Below, in pieces: positions 17,770 through 24,052 of a DNA stretch of 64,000 nt. The stretch is from positions 62,001 through 126,000 of IMG/VR virus record IMGVR_UViG_3300025012_000027; one strand, 5' to 3'. The notes below the pieces were generated by a model. That model was not told the origin of the DNA, made no database searches, and saw only the letters and a program-made list of their open reading frames with translations. Each line of letters opens with the position of its first letter. Position 1 is the stretch's first letter. Both the position numbers and the translations under genes were made by a program.

Positions 17770-18129
17770 ATGTCCAATAATGTATCTGAAGAATCTTGGT
17801 TTAAACACCAATGGAGACCCACGACTGCTTGGGTCTATCTTGCCATCTGTCTTTTCGACTTCCTGATAGCACCCATTCTAACCGCTGTATATTTTGCAAA
17901 ATATGGTGGTGACTATGTTGCTTGGAAGCCGATATCATTGTCTGAAGGTGGATTGTTCCACATGGCAATGGGCGCAATCTTAGGTATCACTAGCTGGACT
18001 CGTGGTCAAGAGCGAATCTCATCAGCTAGATATCGATCAGAACATTCGTATAGGTCAGACGACCGTGCCCCATATCGTTCTACCACGGAGACTGATTTCA
18101 GGGATAACCTGATCAATGATGACAGATGA
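17770..18129 (+). CDS. Putative holin (GTA 3TM-holin-like)
   Basis: WRP motif, hydrophobic helices, GAILG.TSWTRGQE; ATGA-coupled to endolysin. Confidence 0.65.
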   Translation: MSNNVSEESWFKHQWRPTTAWVYLAICLFDFLIAPILTAVYFAKYGGDYVAWKPISLSEGGLFHMAMGAILGITSWTRGQERISSARYRSEHSYRSDDRAPYRSTTETDFRDNLINDDR

Positions 18130-18740
18130 TCACAGTTGAACAACTACTAGAGATTTTTCCTAGAATAGAAGATGCTGACTTTTGGGTCGAGGCAATGGAG
18201 TATAATCTACCAGCTCATGATATCATAGAAGGGCCGCGTCTTTGGATGTTTTTAGCACAGTGCGGGCATGAGTCTGCTGGGTTCACAGTTTTTCAAGAAA
18301 ACTTGAACTACTCAAGCACCGGTCTGTTAAAAACTTTTCCGAAGTATTTTAACACAAAACTTGCAGCTCAATGCGCGAGACAGCCAGAACTTATAGCAAA
18401 TATTGTGTATGCTAACCGAATGGGTAATGGTCCATCAGAAAGTGGCGATGGTTATAGGTTTAGAGGTAGAGGACCAATCCAAATCACGGGTCGCAGAAAC
18501 TACACTGCTATGTCACACGATCTATGGGGTGATGATCGAGCCGTTGAAGAACCTGAGATGATTCTTTCGCCCGACAATGCAATTGCTAGTGCTGGATGGT
18601 ATTGGGACATCGCAAAACTAAATCAATATTGTGATCGAGAAGACGTCGTTACTGTTACCCGACGCATCAATGGTGGTACTAATGGATTGGCCGATCGCAA
18701 ACATCTTTACGCACAAATCAAAGAAATGTTGAACCAGTAG
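18126..18740 (+). CDS. GH19 chitinase-like endolysin
   Basis: FLAQCGHES, ENLNYS, YANRMGNG, FRGRGPIQITG, RRINGGTNGL. Confidence 0.93.
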   Translation: MITVEQLLEIFPRIEDADFWVEAMEYNLPAHDIIEGPRLWMFLAQCGHESAGFTVFQENLNYSSTGLLKTFPKYFNTKLAAQCARQPELIANIVYANRMGNGPSESGDGYRFRGRGPIQITGRRNYTAMSHDLWGDDRAVEEPEMILSPDNAIASAGWYWDIAKLNQYCDREDVVTVTRRINGGTNGLADRKHLYAQIKEMLNQ

Positions 18741-18987: not shown

Positions 18988-19061
18988 TATCCACTTGAAA
19001 TACTTGGTCTCTCCTTGTAACTGCAAAATTGTGTTATAATAGCGGCACACAAGGAGTTCCA

Positions 19062-19784
19062 ATGTTTGACTTTGTATCTGATGATGCCAAAACAACCCAT
19101 TTGTCAATGTTTGGATTGATGAAGACCAACCAAGGTCTGTTCAAAACAGCAAAGCAGGCAAACTATTTGTTTCCTATGTATTGTAAAGCACGCAGTTTCG
19201 ATACAATAGAGTCGGTGAAAACAAACTTTGGTATTGATCTAACCCCCGGGCAATGTATCGTAAACGTCGATGCAACTACGTCATGGGCTAGTTATGGCAC
19301 TAACAGCATTCGTCCAGTTTCATGGATGTATGTTGTTGATAAATATGGGGTTGTCGCAGAATACAAACTCGGATATAAAGGCACTATGCGAGAAGGCACT
19401 TACGTCGATCCAACAAAAACGAAACTTGTTTGGAATCGAACATGCGCAGTTAAGGAACTTGAACCAGTTGCCGTTGCTGAAAAAGTTCCCAGCAAACACG
19501 TTAGCTACGTTGGGCGTCGCATCGAAATGGAATGTACGGTTAAAAAGATTCGTACATATAACAAACCAAAGTTCCACTATTACGATTCTTCAGTCGGTTA
19601 TATGACCGTCATGGAGAATGCCGGTAACGTTGTTATCTACTGGGGCGCATTCGATGATGTATATGAAGGCGATACGATTAAGATTCGCGCAACAATCAAA
19701 GAACACTCTGTGCGAGATGGTGTTGCTCAAACGATCGTAAATCGACCAACACTAATTAAAGAAAAACAAGAAATCACAGCATAA
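19062..19784 (+). CDS. Hypothetical protein with C-terminal OB-fold-like domain
   Basis: AAGGAG RBS; SKHVSYVG.R...EGDTIKIRATIKEH...QTIVNRP. Confidence 0.65.
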   Translation: MFDFVSDDAKTTHLSMFGLMKTNQGLFKTAKQANYLFPMYCKARSFDTIESVKTNFGIDLTPGQCIVNVDATTSWASYGTNSIRPVSWMYVVDKYGVVAEYKLGYKGTMREGTYVDPTKTKLVWNRTCAVKELEPVAVAEKVPSKHVSYVGRRIEMECTVKKIRTYNKPKFHYYDSSVGYMTVMENAGNVVIYWGAFDDVYEGDTIKIRATIKEHSVRDGVAQTIVNRPTLIKEKQEITA

Positions 19785-19786
19785 CC

Positions 19787-20956
19787 AAGGATGTAAATGG
19801 CAGATGAATTTAAAGTATTGAGTGACCGCCATGCGCATTACTGTTGAGTGATTTGCAGTTGTCGTAGTGAAATCTTTTAAAATTCCATGTGGTGCCGATT
19901 CGATTACAGTGCGGACATTCAAACCTATTAGGTACCCTCCCTAACACATATCCTGCAGGAACACTAGATGATTGTGGTAATCTTAAGTTGTCGACGCCGT
20001 TATTATACCATCTAGTGCTAGTAACCGCATGCTTATATAGGTGATTGTTCTTCCAGAATTCAGCGGTGGTTATAGTAATCCGTTTATCGGTGGTCAACTC
20101 GATGACTGGTATGCGACCGGAGCATCCCTTATTGCCTTTACCAGTATGGTCATATAAGTCTTTATTAGCCGCATACTCTTCGCTAGTCAGTCTTACTTTT
20201 TCAGTCGTCCCTTTAGTATGAACGGTTAGTTTTCCGGATGGAAGTTTTAGCCCAGAATTCCAAGATGGGGTCCCTTCCGCGAAATGTTTGTATAACCCTC
20301 GATTTGCACGATATTCGGCTACAGTTACCCAGACAGTTTCATCAGTTGCTACTAATTTACACGACAGATGCGCTGGATGAGTAGCACAATGTCGGGTTCG
20401 ACTGTCAGAAATCTTCTTGCGCGTTTCTGGGCTGACATATTTTCCGGTATGCCTTTTCGATACTTGTTTGGCATGTGCTATACACGCCTCGCCGTATAAC
20501 AAAGCCGCGTTTATCATATTGTCGTCGTCAAACTTAGATATGTTTTGGGTCGAACACATCAACAGCAAAGGTGATGCGTTTTGCGCAACTCGCCATGATT
20601 TCCATAATAAGAAATGTGCGACGAGGTGATCTGAGTGTGTTAGAATAACCCGATTCCACGGAAATCTTGCAAAATTTGAATATTGGCCAAATGCCCATCT
20701 AGGAAGTATGTGGTGAGCTGCGGTTTTAAATTTTATGCGTTTTGGCAGACGCGCAGATTCTATGAATGTAAAATATTCAACTAGATCTATCGTAGGATAT
20801 TCTTGACGAAACGCGTCAACATAAGTATAATTACTGAACATTGTTATTTCCTTAGTACCGTTTTAACGTGTTTAGAGTCCTTGGGTGCGTAATACCGCGA
20901 AGGACACTTTTATTTAAAGGGTGTAAATGGCAGATGAATTTAAAGTATTGAGTGAC
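19787..20956. repeat. 40-bp direct repeat (19787-19826 / 20917-20956) of the topoisomerase RBS and first 10 codons, bracketing the HNH gene
   Basis: aagg(a/g)tgtaaATGgcagatgaatttaaagtattgagtgac, 39/40 identical. Confidence 0.95.
19810..20841 (-). CDS. Free-standing HNH homing endonuclease
   Basis: HHILPR...NRVILTHSDHLVAHFLLWK; NUMOD3-like SPETRKKIS; three internal repeats; WYNNG; C-terminal CPHC finger. Confidence 0.85.
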   Translation of the reverse strand: MFSNYTYVDAFRQEYPTIDLVEYFTFIESARLPKRIKFKTAAHHILPRWAFGQYSNFARFPWNRVILTHSDHLVAHFLLWKSWRVAQNASPLLLMCSTQNISKFDDDNMINAALLYGEACIAHAKQVSKRHTGKYVSPETRKKISDSRTRHCATHPAHLSCKLVATDETVWVTVAEYRANRGLYKHFAEGTPSWNSGLKLPSGKLTVHTKGTTEKVRLTSEEYAANKDLYDHTGKGNKGCSGRIPVIELTTDKRITITTAEFWKNNHLYKHAVTSTRWYNNGVDNLRLPQSSSVPAGYVLGRVPNRFECPHCNRIGTTWNFKRFHYDNCKSLNSNAHGGHSIL

Positions 20957-22732
20957 AGGGACCACATAATGTTGCGACCGGGCATGTATGCGGGATCGGT
21001 AGTTGAAGAGCCCATCTCAGGTATCATTGATTACAAATATCAATCGAAGAAGATTGTCCCAGCACTTATCAAGTGCATCGAAGAGATTCTGCAGAATTCT
21101 ATTGACGAGCATATTCGCACTGATGGAAAGTTTGCTACTGAAATATCGTTGACGATCGACCAAACGATCAATGGAACAGAAATTACAATCGCGGATAACG
21201 GCCGCGGAATTCCTGTTGAAAAGATCGGCGATTCTTATCGACCAGTATTAGCATGGACTGAGTTGAGAGCAGGGTCTAACTTCGATGACTCTGCTGGTCG
21301 AGTGACCGCTGGCACAAACGGAATGGGGGCAGCTATCACCAACGTTCTTTCAAAACAGTTCATCGGAACAAGTTGCGACGGGAAGAAACGTATCGTAGTA
21401 TCGTCATATGACAATATGTCTACTGTCGACTTTGAGATATCAAAGACCAACGCTAAAGGTGTTACTGTACAGTTTATCCCCGATCTAGAACGATTTGGTT
21501 TGAGTGGGTTTACGTTAGACCACGAAGACGTCATCAATGACCGAATTCGTAATCTAGCTATCCAGTATCCTAAGATAACGTTCAGCGTCAACCGTGAGAA
21601 GATCAAGTTTAAAAACATCAAACAAGTCGCAAAACTGTTTCATGAAGATGCTATATCGGTCGAAGATGGGTTGGCTGCTATCGTTATTGCTCCTTCGGGT
21701 GACGACGAAGAGTTTCGTTGTTTGAGTTACGTTAACGGCATATACATCAAGAACGGCGGGGCGCACATCGATTTTGTGGTCGATCGTATCATTGTAATTC
21801 TTCGAGAGTATGTGAAGAAGAAGCATAAGATCGACGTGCTACCGAATCAAATCCGCCAGCACTTGTTGATTGCTAGTTGGATCAATGGATTCCCGAATTT
21901 GAAGTTTGACTCACAGACAAAGGAACGCATTACTAACTCGCAGTCAGAAGTGAATGTGGTATTGGGCAGTATCGACTTCGATCGAGTGGCAAAACAGATT
22001 CTAGGAACTCCGAGTATAATTGATCCAATGATCGCTGCTATTCTTTTCAAGAAAGAAATGGCTGAAAAATTAGCCCTGGCAAAGAAGCAGAAATCTGCGG
22101 CAAAACTTAGAGTCGTCAATCACATCGTAGCAACAGACCCCAATCCAGAAAACAAGATGTTGTTGCTGTGCGAGGGATTGTCTGCAATTGGATCATTGAT
22201 CTCAGTACGAAATCCTAAGACTGTTGGCGGATATCCTCTGCGAGGTAAGCCACTCAACATTTGTGGGATGAAACCAGTAGACATCGTTAAGAACAAGGAG
22301 ATGTTTGAGTTAATGAACATCATTGGTCTTGAGTTTGGTAAACCAAACCCAGAGTTGAACTATGGTAAGATTGCTGTGTTCAGCGACTTAGACATTGACG
22401 GTGCGCACATATTTGGCTTGTTGTTGAACTTTTTCAGTCTTTGGCCATCATTGTTTGCTGAGCGAAGAATATTTCGTATGCTGGCTCCTTTGTACCATTG
22501 TACTAAAGGAAAAGATGTTAAAATCTTTTACACAAAAGAAGAGTTTGATAAAGCAAATCTTAAGGGATATGCTGTAGACTACTTCAAGGGATTGGGTAGC
22601 ATGCCCGAAGATGTGTATCGCGAGTGTGTAAACAATCCTAGATTGATTGAAGTATGTGCGGACGATCTGAATAAACTCGACATGGCATTTGGCGATAGTG
22701 CTGATGCTCGTAAACAATGGCTAATGGCTTGA
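20927..22732 (+). CDS. 39: DNA topoisomerase II large subunit (fused gp39+gp60)
   Basis: RPGMY, EILQNSIDE, DNGRGIP, GTNGMG, FDSQTKE, EGLSA, PLRGK, DLDIDG, YFKGLGS. Confidence 0.97.
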   Translation: MADEFKVLSDRDHIMLRPGMYAGSVVEEPISGIIDYKYQSKKIVPALIKCIEEILQNSIDEHIRTDGKFATEISLTIDQTINGTEITIADNGRGIPVEKIGDSYRPVLAWTELRAGSNFDDSAGRVTAGTNGMGAAITNVLSKQFIGTSCDGKKRIVVSSYDNMSTVDFEISKTNAKGVTVQFIPDLERFGLSGFTLDHEDVINDRIRNLAIQYPKITFSVNREKIKFKNIKQVAKLFHEDAISVEDGLAAIVIAPSGDDEEFRCLSYVNGIYIKNGGAHIDFVVDRIIVILREYVKKKHKIDVLPNQIRQHLLIASWINGFPNLKFDSQTKERITNSQSEVNVVLGSIDFDRVAKQILGTPSIIDPMIAAILFKKEMAEKLALAKKQKSAAKLRVVNHIVATDPNPENKMLLLCEGLSAIGSLISVRNPKTVGGYPLRGKPLNICGMKPVDIVKNKEMFELMNIIGLEFGKPNPELNYGKIAVFSDLDIDGAHIFGLLLNFFSLWPSLFAERRIFRMLAPLYHCTKGKDVKIFYTKEEFDKANLKGYAVDYFKGLGSMPEDVYRECVNNPRLIEVCADDLNKLDMAFGDSADARKQWLMA

Positions 22733-22735
22733 TAC

Positions 22736-24052
22736 ATGAAAATTGAACAACGAACACTAACTGATATCATTGACACCGAGTTTCGTGCATTCTCGATGTA
22801 CACGATCGAGAATCGAGCAATTCCATCTGCAATTGATGGATTGAAGCCTGTTATGCGCAAATTGCTGTATGCAATGATCGTGGAACATAAGGGAAAAAAG
22901 GTTAAGCTCTCTGATTTGGGCGGGATCTCGAAGTACTCATACCATCACGGAGAAACATCTGCTATAGGTGCAGCTATTGGATTATCACAGGCGTGGAGCA
23001 ACAATGCGACACTGTTTGATGGTCACGGGAACTTTGGATCGAGACTTGTTCAAGAATCTGCGGCTCCTCGATACATATATGCTTCGTTGTCTGATAACTA
23101 TAAGAAATACTTCAGGGATACCGAGGTATCACCTGTGGCGTTCGACAAAGAAAACCCAGAACCAGCATTCTATCTCCCAATCATTCCGTGGGTGTTGGTA
23201 AACGGAATCAGTGGTATTGCTGTTGGATTCAAAACAGATATCTTACCTAGACAAATATCAGATCTAGTTGCCGCTACAAAAGCATGTGTAAAAAATCCCG
23301 ATGAATTTTTGAAAGCGGATGCTCCTATTAAGCCATCGTTCCCAGACTTCAAAGGAACGGTCACTCAATTGTCTAGTAATCAGTGGAAAACTTCTGGTAT
23401 CATTAGTTACGTTGGTAAGAACTATTTTTCAATCACCGAAGTACCTATTGGTTATGATCGAGCATCTTATGTAGAGTTGTTGAACTCGATGATCGACAAA
23501 GATCTGATTCGAGATTATGAAGACTGCTGCTCCAAAGCAGGTTTTGGATTCAACGTAAAGGTCAGTTTGAATCAGAAGATGGATGCCGAGAAAGATCTTT
23601 TGAAGTATTTCAAACTTGAACGAACACATACCGAGATTCTAACGACTCTTGGGCATGACGGCAAGTTGAAGATCTTCAATTCAGTTGCAGAGCTAATCTA
23701 CTACTTCGTTAACTATCGATTGACTAAGTTCGGTGATAAGATTCTGTACGACAAAACCAAGTTGTCTGAAGAACTTGATATAATTGAGCACAAGATTAAG
23801 TTCGTGAAAGATGTGATCGACGATAAGATCGACTTTAGGCATACTACGAAAAGTGCATTGCTGTCATGGATTAACAGCAATATATCGACATGTGATTGGG
23901 CTAAGTCATTCATTAACATTCCATTGTATGAATGTACCAGCGATCAAGTAGCAGAATTACAACAATCGTTTGACGATAAAACCGAAAAGATGCAGCAGTT
24001 GAACCTACAAACTCCTAATGGCATGTACCTAGCTGCTCTAAAAGGCGTATAG
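22736..24052 (+). CDS. 52: DNA topoisomerase II medium subunit gp52
   Basis: RAIPSAIDGLKP, YHHGE, GNFGSR, AAPRY (catalytic Tyr), LVNGISGIAVG. Confidence 0.97.
   Translation: MKIEQRTLTDIIDTEFRAFSMYTIENRAIPSAIDGLKPVMRKLLYAMIVEHKGKKVKLSDLGGISKYSYHHGETSAIGAAIGLSQAWSNNATLFDGHGNFGSRLVQESAAPRYIYASLSDNYKKYFRDTEVSPVAFDKENPEPAFYLPIIPWVLVNGISGIAVGFKTDILPRQISDLVAATKACVKNPDEFLKADAPIKPSFPDFKGTVTQLSSNQWKTSGIISYVGKNYFSITEVPIGYDRASYVELLNSMIDKDLIRDYEDCCSKAGFGFNVKVSLNQKMDAEKDLLKYFKLERTHTEILTTLGHDGKLKIFNSVAELIYYFVNYRLTKFGDKILYDKTKLSEELDIIEHKIKFVKDVIDDKIDFRHTTKSALLSWINSNISTCDWAKSFINIPLYECTSDQVAELQQSFDDKTEKMQQLNLQTPNGMYLAALKGV

What the first reader, a model, noticed from the sequence alone, without database searches (positions are those of the whole stretch)
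19787..20956. HNH endonuclease invaded the start of the topoisomerase gene in reverse and supplied a new 5' end
Seen: the RBS and first 10 codons of gene 39 occur twice, 1130 bp apart (39/40 nt). The upstream copy reads MADEFKVLSDRHAHYC* and its antisense provides the HNH C-terminus and stop. The downstream copy starts the intact gene and abuts the HNH late promoter. Inference: a splicing-free way to insert into an essential gene; the cut site probably lies near codons 10-15, where the copies diverge.
Basis: partly seen in the sequence, partly recalled or inferred. Interest (0 to 1): 0.6.

Follow-up and report, generated by a model that had tools for sequence, protein, structure and literature searches.

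The report
Homing endonuclease scar at topoisomerase start
In a T4-like groundwater phage, a selfish HNH nuclease gene sits backwards at the very start of the essential topoisomerase gene; the old ribosome-binding site and first ten codons remain as a 40-base scar, and a near-identical copy starts the working gene, which gives a natural footprint of how such elements enter new sites rather than a new kind of system.

Summary
A 40-nt direct repeat (39/40) at 19787-19826 and 20917-20956 flanks a 343-aa reverse-strand ORF; 0 such pairs are expected by chance. The ORF is a Mob-like HNH homing endonuclease by PHROG hits and an invariant HH..N..H...H motif, although Pfam is blank.

Three HEG-free, syntenic relatives (L021, L024, L025) have the ORF251 orthologue running straight into a single gene 39 start. 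The upstream copy is therefore the ancestral start, and the element landed after codon 10.

Four homologous HEGs (36-47% identity) in other T4-like contigs all sit divergently just upstream of gene 39. They share a control region: a promoter, a covarying hairpin and a T-run carrying a late-type motif. None of them has the duplication. Three of the four carry a terminator-like hairpin right after their own stop.

The window's HEG has lost its stop and that hairpin. It reads 13 residues past the conserved C-terminus into the antisense scar.

Best reading: the cassette was acquired by break repair that was homologous on the gene 39 side and illegitimate on the other. The cut site, the donor and read-level support remain untested. 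This is a new variant of known kinds: T4 one-sided homing, and fungal mitochondrial endonuclease ORFs that bring a replacement gene end.

The parts
19029..19784 (+). ORF251 (240 aa from the ATG at 19062), the gene that originally ran into gene 39
   Evidence: It is 58-60% identical to the 240-246-aa ORFs whose stop overlaps the gene 39 ATG (ATGA) in the HEG-free relatives L021, L024 and L025. The DNA of its 3' end aligns with theirs.
19787..19826 (+). Upstream repeat copy: the ancestral ribosome-binding site and codons 1-10 of gene 39, now a scar
   Evidence: 39/40 identical to 20917-20956. It keeps the native left context, 2 nt after the ORF251 stop.
19797..19847 (+). Mini-ORF of 16 codons plus stop, left by the truncated old gene 39 start
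   Evidence: Read directly from the sequence. No evidence of function.
19827..19851 (.). 25-nt junction or filler between the scar and the conserved end of the HEG; on the minus strand it encodes HEG residues 331-339
   Evidence: No second copy in the genome or in any related locus. No significant similarity to gene 39 codons 11 onward. It ends in TTGAGTGA, which also ends the scar (19818-19825).
19810..20841 (-). Free-standing Mob-like HNH homing endonuclease gene, 343 aa, with a 13-residue read-through tail
   Evidence: phrog_655 homing endonuclease 2.4e-25 and phrog_12434 HNH endonuclease. About 43% identity over residues 7-79 to ORFs in T4-like phages, most annotated as HNH or homing endonucleases. 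Invariant H43 H44 N63 H72 H76 and C309 C312 H325 C329. Homologues end 2-4 residues after C329-K330.
20803..20831 (+). Sigma-70-like promoter (TTGACG, 17 nt, TATAAT; 11 of 12) inside the HEG 5' coding end, pointing at gene 39
   Evidence: Consensus scan. L012 and L013 carry TTGACT-17-TATAAT at the matching side of their cassettes. Function not shown.
20877..20905 (.). Hairpin of the shared HEG/gene 39 control region, followed by a T-run on the plus strand
   Evidence: Each HEG-bearing locus tested (four folded; L011 read from the alignment) folds a hairpin at the same place with different stem sequences: GTCCTT/AAGGAC, GTCACT/AGTGAC, GGTAGC/GCTACC, ACAGGT/ACCTGT. The four HEG-free loci inspected lack it.
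20911..20918 (-). Late-promoter-like motif TTTAAATA upstream of the HEG
   Evidence: (T/G)TAAATA is 5-8 fold enriched upstream of ORFs and precedes tail sheath, baseplate, terminase and virion genes in this genome. It lies 76 nt from the HEG ATG, further than the usual 31-45 nt.
20917..20956 (+). Downstream repeat copy: the working ribosome-binding site and codons 1-10 of gene 39
20927..22732 (+). Gene 39: DNA topoisomerase II large subunit, 601 aa, the fused 39+60 type, intact
   Evidence: phrog_543 2.3e-193; Pfam HATPase_c, DNA_gyraseB, TOPRIM_C. Full-length alignment to more than 100 relatives.
22736..24052 (+). Gene 52: topoisomerase II medium subunit, directly downstream
   Evidence: ORF list. 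The same gene carries PF00521 in the ENA copy of the locus.

Best explanation
A mobile cassette has been acquired by a phage lineage in which gene 39 followed ORFx directly. The cassette consists of a Mob-like HNH homing endonuclease gene on the reverse strand and a small two-way control region: a promoter towards gene 39, a hairpin, and a late-type promoter towards the HEG.

The likeliest route is this. The endonuclease of a co-infecting, closely related HEG-bearing phage broke the recipient in the 5' part of gene 39. The gene 39 side of the break was repaired by homology with the donor, which copied in the donor's gene 39 start, its ribosome-binding site, the control region and the HEG.

The recipient's old ribosome-binding site and codons 1-10 survived as a 40-nt scar. 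The joint cut off the HEG's own stop and terminator, so the HEG now ends 13 residues late, inside the antisense of the scar.

Shown: the repeat, the ancestral position, the family's site preference, and the truncated 3' end of the cassette. Inferred: the break, its place, the donor, and the repair pathway.
For: 1. The repeat is real and non-random and is present in an independent k127 assembly.
2. Three HEG-free syntenic lineages have the ORF251 orthologue overlapping a single gene 39 start. Their best second-copy scores are 9-11, against 37 in this phage. The left flank of the upstream copy aligns with their ORF 3' ends.
3. All five members of the HEG family lie divergently just upstream of gene 39, next to different upstream genes, as expected for an element that targets gene 39.
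4. L010 (HEG-bearing) and L026 (HEG-free) share the small upstream ORF. Their DNA homology starts at the gene 39 ATG. The cassette replaces a 30-nt spacer with no duplication.
5. Three of the four homologous cassettes (L010, L011, L013) end 2-4 codons after the invariant C-K and then carry a terminator-like hairpin. The window copy has neither and runs into the scar.
6. One-sided homing with an illegitimate joint on the side without homology is documented for T4 (review PMC2988022).
7. The HEG keeps all invariant catalytic and zinc-finger residues, and the scar is 39/40 intact. Both fit a recent event.
Against: No donor and no near-identical HEG-free allele was found, so neither junction can be compared with its parents.

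If the new start came from a donor, that donor must have matched the recipient at 39 of 40 positions. This needs a very close relative, or later gene conversion. A copy made from the recipient itself would explain it more simply.

No sign of a foreign, co-converted tract was seen in the 5' part of gene 39.

The 25-nt filler is unexplained.

No reads were available.
Confidence: 0.58

Rival explanations
1. Composite mobile unit as a regular strategy. On this view the element always travels as HEG plus control region plus a replacement gene 39 start, and it inserts inside the coding region after about codon 10. The duplication is then its normal, adaptive way of entering an essential gene without splicing.
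For: The outcome in this phage is exactly that. Fungal mitochondrial endonuclease ORFs do the same at the 3' ends of genes (PMC3630166). In the ancestral arrangement there is no free spacer between ORF251 and gene 39, so only an insertion that brings a new start would leave both genes intact.
Against: None of the four other family members shows a remnant of gene 39 beyond the HEG 3' end. L010 against L026 shows a clean spacer insertion. The window cassette has lost the stop and terminator hairpin that three of the other four keep, which looks accidental.
Confidence: 0.15
2. Transposition-like insertion with a target-site duplication. Two offset nicks about 40 nt apart (the HNH enzyme may be a nickase) left overlapping ends. 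Both ends were filled in and joined illegitimately to a 1090-nt cassette, so both copies derive from the recipient.
For: It explains the 39/40 identity without needing a near-identical donor. The left edge of the repeat coincides with the end of the cassette's conserved block. MobA and MobE are reported to nick one strand, and transposition-like HEG insertions are discussed for T4-type phages (PMC2988022).
Against: A 40-nt stagger and two illegitimate joints are not documented for this class. The cassette ends carry no terminal inverted repeats. The right junction is equally explained by ordinary homology.
Confidence: 0.12
3. The duplicate is kept for a function. The HEG transcript has no evident terminator before it crosses the scar, so it would carry 40 nt that are 39/40 complementary to the translation start of gene 39 and could silence it late. 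Alternatively, the mini-ORF or the repeat pair serves regulation or reversible excision.
For: No minus-strand terminator-like site follows the HEG stop. The scar is almost undecayed.
Against: No other family member has the duplicate. A recent origin explains the intact scar just as well. No expression data exist.
Confidence: 0.06
4. Assembly artefact: the HEG segment was threaded into the phage contig through a shared 35-mer.
For: All contigs come from one groundwater sample. The k=31 Logan graph breaks at the repeat. No reads could be laid.
Against: A k=127 contig crosses both copies and is identical to the JGI contig. The two copies differ at one base, and each keeps its own flank. The alternative resolution would need a free 1.1-kb circle. 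HEG homologues sit at this same place in unrelated contigs.
Confidence: 0.03

Closest known systems
Free-standing HNH homing endonucleases of T4-type phages (MobA-MobE); MobA targets the topoisomerase large-subunit gene
   Same: An N-terminal HNH domain is followed by a separate presumed DNA-binding part. The gene is free-standing, lies next to the gene it presumably targets, and is present or absent among relatives. A late-type promoter sits upstream, and a promoter for the neighbouring essential gene is embedded in the element (PMC2988022).
   Different: This is a different family: no Pfam hit, and only about 43% identity over about 75 residues to T4-like HNH genes at another locus. It sits at the 5' end of gene 39, on the opposite strand, not between the 39 and 60 parts. 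No translational bypass and no split gene are involved.
One-sided homing with illegitimate double-strand-break repair in T4 (work summarised in PMC2988022)
   Same: Homology on one flank only. The joint on the other flank shows loss of sequence. The element reaches a site it could not enter by normal homing.
   Different: Those were laboratory crosses with the td intron. Here it is a natural free-standing HEG, and the joint preserved a working upstream gene and left a 40-nt duplicate. Microhomology at the joint cannot be checked without the donor.
Fungal mitochondrial mobile endonuclease ORFs that bring a replacement gene end (Allomyces atp6; Glomus atp6, atp9, cox2, nad3)
   Same: An endonuclease ORF lies inside the terminal coding part of an essential gene. 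The displaced native end is kept beside it as a dead duplicate, and a second copy completes the gene (PMC3630166).
   Different: Those sit at the 3' end, on the same strand, often fused in frame, and the inserted end is clearly foreign. Here it is the 5' end including the ribosome-binding site, the ORF is on the opposite strand, and the two copies are 39/40 identical.
Genes-in-pieces made by HEG insertion (Aeh1 mobE in nrdA; T4 mobA between 39 and 60)
   Same: An HEG has landed in an essential DNA-metabolism gene of a T4-type phage, and gene function is retained (PMC2988022; Aeromonas examples).
   Different: There the host protein is split into two polypeptides. Here the host protein stays whole, and only a 10-codon stub is left behind.

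Membership tests
HNH (His-Me finger) homing endonuclease, free-standing, T4 Mob-like | HNH catalytic motif: HH, then N, then H-x3-H with the usual spacing | tested here: met
   H43 H44, N63, H72 and H76 are invariant in all five family members, with 8 residues from N to H and 3 from H to H. That this matches the classical motif is from my own knowledge of colicin-type HNH nucleases.
HNH (His-Me finger) homing endonuclease, free-standing, T4 Mob-like | Profile-level homology to known HNH or homing endonuclease families | tested here: met
   All five members hit phrog_655 (best 2.4e-25) and phrog_12434 HNH endonuclease (best 2.7e-10). tblastn finds T4-like ORFs, most annotated as HNH or homing endonucleases. 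Pfam, NCBIfam and PDB sequence searches found no HNH model.
HNH (His-Me finger) homing endonuclease, free-standing, T4 Mob-like | Beta-beta-alpha metal fold | tested here: inconclusive
   The AlphaFold2 model from 5 sequences has mean pLDDT 52, and the N-terminal domain is below 50. No fold search was run on it.
HNH (His-Me finger) homing endonuclease, free-standing, T4 Mob-like | Present or absent at one genomic site among related genomes | tested here: met
   Present in the window, L010, L011, L012 and L013 upstream of gene 39. Absent at the same site in L021-L025 and L026.
HNH (His-Me finger) homing endonuclease, free-standing, T4 Mob-like | Not carried by an intron or intein | tested here: met
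   No Rfam family at E up to 1 in 19400-21400. Gene 39 is one uninterrupted frame. The HEG is on the opposite strand.
HNH (His-Me finger) homing endonuclease, free-standing, T4 Mob-like | Site-specific cleavage of the HEG-free allele and biased inheritance | not testable with these tools
   Needs the enzyme and a cross.
Product of one-sided (illegitimate) break repair | Element truncated or rearranged on the flank without homology | tested here: met
   The native stop and the terminator hairpin seen in three of the four homologues (L010, L011, L013) are missing. There is a 13-residue read-through tail.
Product of one-sided (illegitimate) break repair | Joint at microhomology between donor and recipient | not testable with these tools
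   No donor sequence was found. An 8-nt TTGAGTGA repeat lies beside the joint, but it does not form a simple microhomology junction.
Endonuclease ORF with replacement gene end (fungal mitochondrial type) | Dead native end kept beside the ORF, with a second copy completing the gene | tested here: met
   here the 5' end rather than the 3' end.
Endonuclease ORF with replacement gene end (fungal mitochondrial type) | The inserted end is foreign (diverged from the native remnant) | tested here: not met
   The copies are 39/40 identical. No foreign tract is seen in the gene 39 5' part.
Transposon with target-site duplication | Terminal inverted repeats and a transposase | tested here: not met
   No inverted repeat at the cassette ends. 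The only ORF is the HNH protein.

The most novel reading that the evidence does not exclude
The scar is not inert. The HEG message runs through it, so late in infection it would carry a 40-nt stretch that is 39/40 complementary to the ribosome-binding site and start of gene 39. The selfish element could then act as a trans-antisense switch on the essential topoisomerase. In addition, the 40-nt direct repeats would let the cassette excise precisely and recreate its own target.
Probability: 0.06. Interest if true: 0.7.

Novelty: new variant of a known kind. Interest (0 to 1): 0.45.

Why it matters
Free-standing homing endonucleases spread easily between phages that share both flanks. How they reach genomes with a different neighbour gene is known mainly from laboratory crosses.

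This locus is a natural, nearly undecayed footprint of such an entry. The old gene start is still there, the cassette is clipped at one end, and the element now lies inside what used to be the coding sequence of an essential gene without splicing, bypass or gene splitting.

It also defines an unnamed HNH family tied to the 5' flank of the topoisomerase gene, with a portable two-way control region. The scar's end suggests where to look for the enzyme's target site.

It does not reveal a new principle.

Tried and rejected
I did not try another route to the reads.
- Near relatives by DNA: megablast and blastn against GenBank phages found nothing useful. The exact 35-mer occurs only in the phage's own JGI contig in metagenome contigs and in no viral contig.
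- HEG word search in viral contigs: none found. ORF251 in viral contigs: none found.
- HEG family size: the five members come from the word-based protein search, which only sees proteins 0.55-1.75 times the query length. Five is therefore a lower bound. The large profile search was not used because the family scans had already settled the protein's nature.
- Pfam, NCBIfam and PDB by sequence gave no HNH hit. The AlphaFold2 model was too poor for a fold search.
- Remnants of gene 39 behind the other four HEGs: none above chance.
- Co-conversion test: the N-terminal part of gp39 looked unusually close to a 622-aa group. This turned out to be a divergent C-terminal third in that group, not a foreign 5' tract here.
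- Possible extension of the scar beyond codon 10 (CGC CAT GCG resembling R-x-H-A of relatives): too short to test; the alignment is about 41% identical.
- Origin of the 25-nt filler: no other copy anywhere held.
- RNAalifold on the hairpin: MAFFT misaligned the covarying stems, so the consensus was meaningless. I rely on the single folds.
- The 'truncated' gp39 P0025 is only a scaffold gap of Ns.
- The 337-aa ORF between gp39 and gp52 in L026 is unrelated to the HEG.

Full report
**What the window is.** The window is bases 62001-126000 of a 216,115-bp virus contig rated complete. The contig comes from a groundwater metagenome. Its topoisomerase is at most 44% identical to that of any cultured phage held, all of them T4-type. 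It is therefore a distant T4-like phage.

**The observation.**
- Bases 19787-19826 and 20917-20956 are 39/40 identical and 1130 bp apart. The 30-nt core occurs exactly twice, and shuffles gave none.
- Each copy holds a Shine-Dalgarno sequence, a 10-nt spacer, the ATG and codons 2-10.
- The upstream copy follows the stop of ORF251 by 2 nt. It continues as a 16-codon mini-ORF.
- The downstream copy opens an intact 601-aa topoisomerase II large subunit, which is followed directly by the medium subunit.
- Between the copies a 343-aa ORF runs on the other strand, 19810-20841.

**Assembly.** An ENA megahit k127 contig contains window 19300-21500 exactly. A Logan k=31 contig equals 19797-20951, so it ends 30 nt inside each 35-nt identical core, as a real repeat would force.

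**The reverse ORF.**
- Pfam, NCBIfam and PDB sequence searches are blank.
- The ORF and its four relatives all hit PHROG 655 (homing endonuclease, 2.4e-25) and PHROG 12434 (HNH endonuclease).
- Residues 7-79 are about 43% identical to ORFs in T4-like phages, most annotated as HNH or homing endonucleases; in the one record I inspected, the gene lies between the primase region and a small virion gene.
- H43 H44, N63, H72 and H76 are invariant with HNH spacing. A C-terminal Cys2-His-Cys finger is also invariant.
- The structure model was too weak to use.
- No intron-like RNA is present.

I accept it as a free-standing Mob-like HNH homing endonuclease. Activity is untested.

**Relatives without the element.** Word-based protein search gave gp39 relatives at 72-76% identity. 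Their contigs L021 (206 kb), L022, L023, L024 and L025 share the window's gene order: an exonuclease-like gene, a holin-like gene, a GH19 lysin, small ORFs, a 240-246-aa ORF, then gene 39 and gene 52. They have no HEG.
- The 240-246-aa ORF is 58-60% identical to ORF251 in the two relatives compared (L021, L024), and there its stop overlaps the gene 39 ATG. The gene calls put L025's stop in the same 4-nt overlap.
- The DNA to the left of the window's upstream copy aligns with the 3' end of those ORFs.
- In six HEG-free loci the best second match to the gene 39 start scores 9-11, against 37 in this phage.

So the upstream copy marks where gene 39 used to start. The insertion, 1130 bp in net, lies after codon 10.

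**The element's family.** Four homologues (36-47% identity, full length) were found, all in metagenome contigs of T4-like phages. Every one sits immediately upstream of gene 39 and divergent from it. The upstream neighbours differ: a small ORF, RNA ligase, and others.

The 53-95 nt between the HEG start and the gene 39 start share one plan.
- A sigma-70-type promoter points towards gene 39. It is near-perfect in L012 and L013. In the window it is TTGACG-17-TATAAT at 20803-20831, just inside the HEG.
- The block GTCTAGAG follows.
- Next is a hairpin whose stem differs in sequence in each locus.
- Last is a T-run whose complement is a late-type motif.

The four HEG-free loci inspected lack this block.

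In this genome T4's TATAAATA is not enriched. (T/G)TAAATA is enriched, and it precedes tail sheath, baseplate wedge, terminase and virion genes by 31-45 nt. The window's TTTAAATA at 20911-20918 fits this motif.

None of the four other loci has a remnant of gene 39 behind the HEG. L010 and the HEG-free L026 share their small upstream ORF. Their DNA homology starts at the gene 39 ATG, so there the cassette simply replaces a 30-nt spacer.

**The odd end in this phage.** The homologues stop 2-4 residues after the invariant Cys-Lys. In three of the four, a terminator-like hairpin follows. The window's HEG has no such stop or hairpin. It reads 13 residues on (SLNSNAHGGHSIL): first through 25 nt of unknown origin (19827-19851, no other copy anywhere), then into the antisense of the scar, which supplies its last four codons and the stop. 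The cassette is therefore clipped at this end and intact at the other.

**Mechanism.**
- Best reading (0.58): the cassette came from a closely related HEG-bearing phage by break repair. The repair used homology in gene 39 on one side and an illegitimate joint on the other, where the upstream genes differ. This kind of one-sided event is documented for T4 (PMC2988022).
- The end of the scar gives a 5' bound for the recipient end, so the cut lay at or 3' of codon 10. That is as far as the sequence goes.
- A weak hint: codon 11 of the working gene is AGG, the rarest Arg codon in the genome (8.7%) and the only one in gene 39. The scar continues with CGC, and relatives use CGN at that position.
- The main weakness is that a donor-derived start must match the recipient at 39/40. 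A copy made from the recipient's own ends (the transposition-like rival) explains that more simply but needs two illegitimate joints.
- In the ancestral layout there was no free spacer between ORF251 and gene 39. Only an event that kept the old ORF end and supplied a new start could leave both genes working. This may be why this odd product survived.

**Comparison with the known.**
- It works like a T4 Mob-type free-standing HEG. A promoter-like site pointing at the essential neighbour lies inside the element; where such a promoter is real, the review notes that it favours retention.
- The terminal duplicate mirrors fungal mitochondrial endonuclease ORFs that bring a replacement 3' end and leave the native end as a dead copy (PMC3630166). 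Here it is the 5' end, on the opposite strand, and the copies are almost identical.
- It differs from the genes-in-pieces cases and from MobA with its bypass, because the host protein stays whole.

I rate it a new variant of known kinds, of moderate interest.

Noticed in passing
L020:4753-5045 (HEG-free relative, ENA scaffold): The only defect in this relative's gene 39 is a run of N at about codons 17-25, the conserved RPxMYxGS motif. A scaffold gap just there could mean strain variation at the spot where a gene 39-directed nuclease might act.
   Followed up: partly
window 20842-20926; L010, L011, L012, L013 between HEG and gene 39: A portable two-way control region is shared by all five HEG-bearing loci: promoter towards gene 39, GTCTAGAG, a hairpin with different stem sequences in each locus, then a T-run whose complement is a late-type motif. 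On the plus strand the hairpin plus T-run looks like a terminator placed between the promoter and gene 39. Its role is unexplained.
   Followed up: partly
whole genome G000 (for example window 17770, 47996, 60328 upstream regions): This phage's late-type motif is (T/G)TAAATA, 31-45 nt before structural genes, not T4's TATAAATA, which is under-represented (10 seen, about 18 expected). TGTTATAAT is the enriched early-type motif.
   Followed up: yes
G000:C1:187089-187361, minus strand (outside the window): A second ORF with a Mob-like HNH domain (33% identity to residues 22-106 of the HEG) lies elsewhere in the same genome.
   Followed up: no
window 19818-19825 and 19844-19851: The 8-mer TTGAGTGA ends the scar and recurs 26 nt later, at the edge of the conserved HEG end. 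It may bear on how the joint formed, but it is not a simple microhomology junction.
   Followed up: partly
window 20957-20959: Codon 11 of gene 39, the first codon after the repeat, is AGG. It is the only AGG in the gene and the rarest Arg codon in the genome (8.7%). The scar has CGC at that place, and relatives have CGN.
   Followed up: partly
gp39 relatives P0112, P0114, P0118, P0119 and L010: A 622-623-aa group of gp39 proteins is about 70% identical to the window's over the first ~375 residues, then drops to about 35%. The C-terminal (Toprim) third is mosaic.
   Followed up: partly
window 19810-20841, HEG residues about 150-280: The middle of the HEG holds three repeats of a strand-strand-helix unit (158-179, 204-225, 243-264) with the motif EY..N..LY. 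They are the only moderately confident parts of the model and are probably DNA-binding modules. A NUMOD3-like stretch (HTGK..S.ETRKKIS) precedes them; that resemblance is recalled from memory.
   Followed up: no
L026:4618-6462: In this relative three ORFs (148, 337 and 113 aa) separate the two topoisomerase subunit genes, which are adjacent in the window. The 337-aa ORF is unrelated to the HEG.
   Followed up: partly
window 17770-18740: A holin-like gene (weak GTA_holin_3TM hit) and a GH19 chitinase-type lysin lie just upstream of the topoisomerase block. Their order is conserved in the HEG-free relatives.
   Followed up: no
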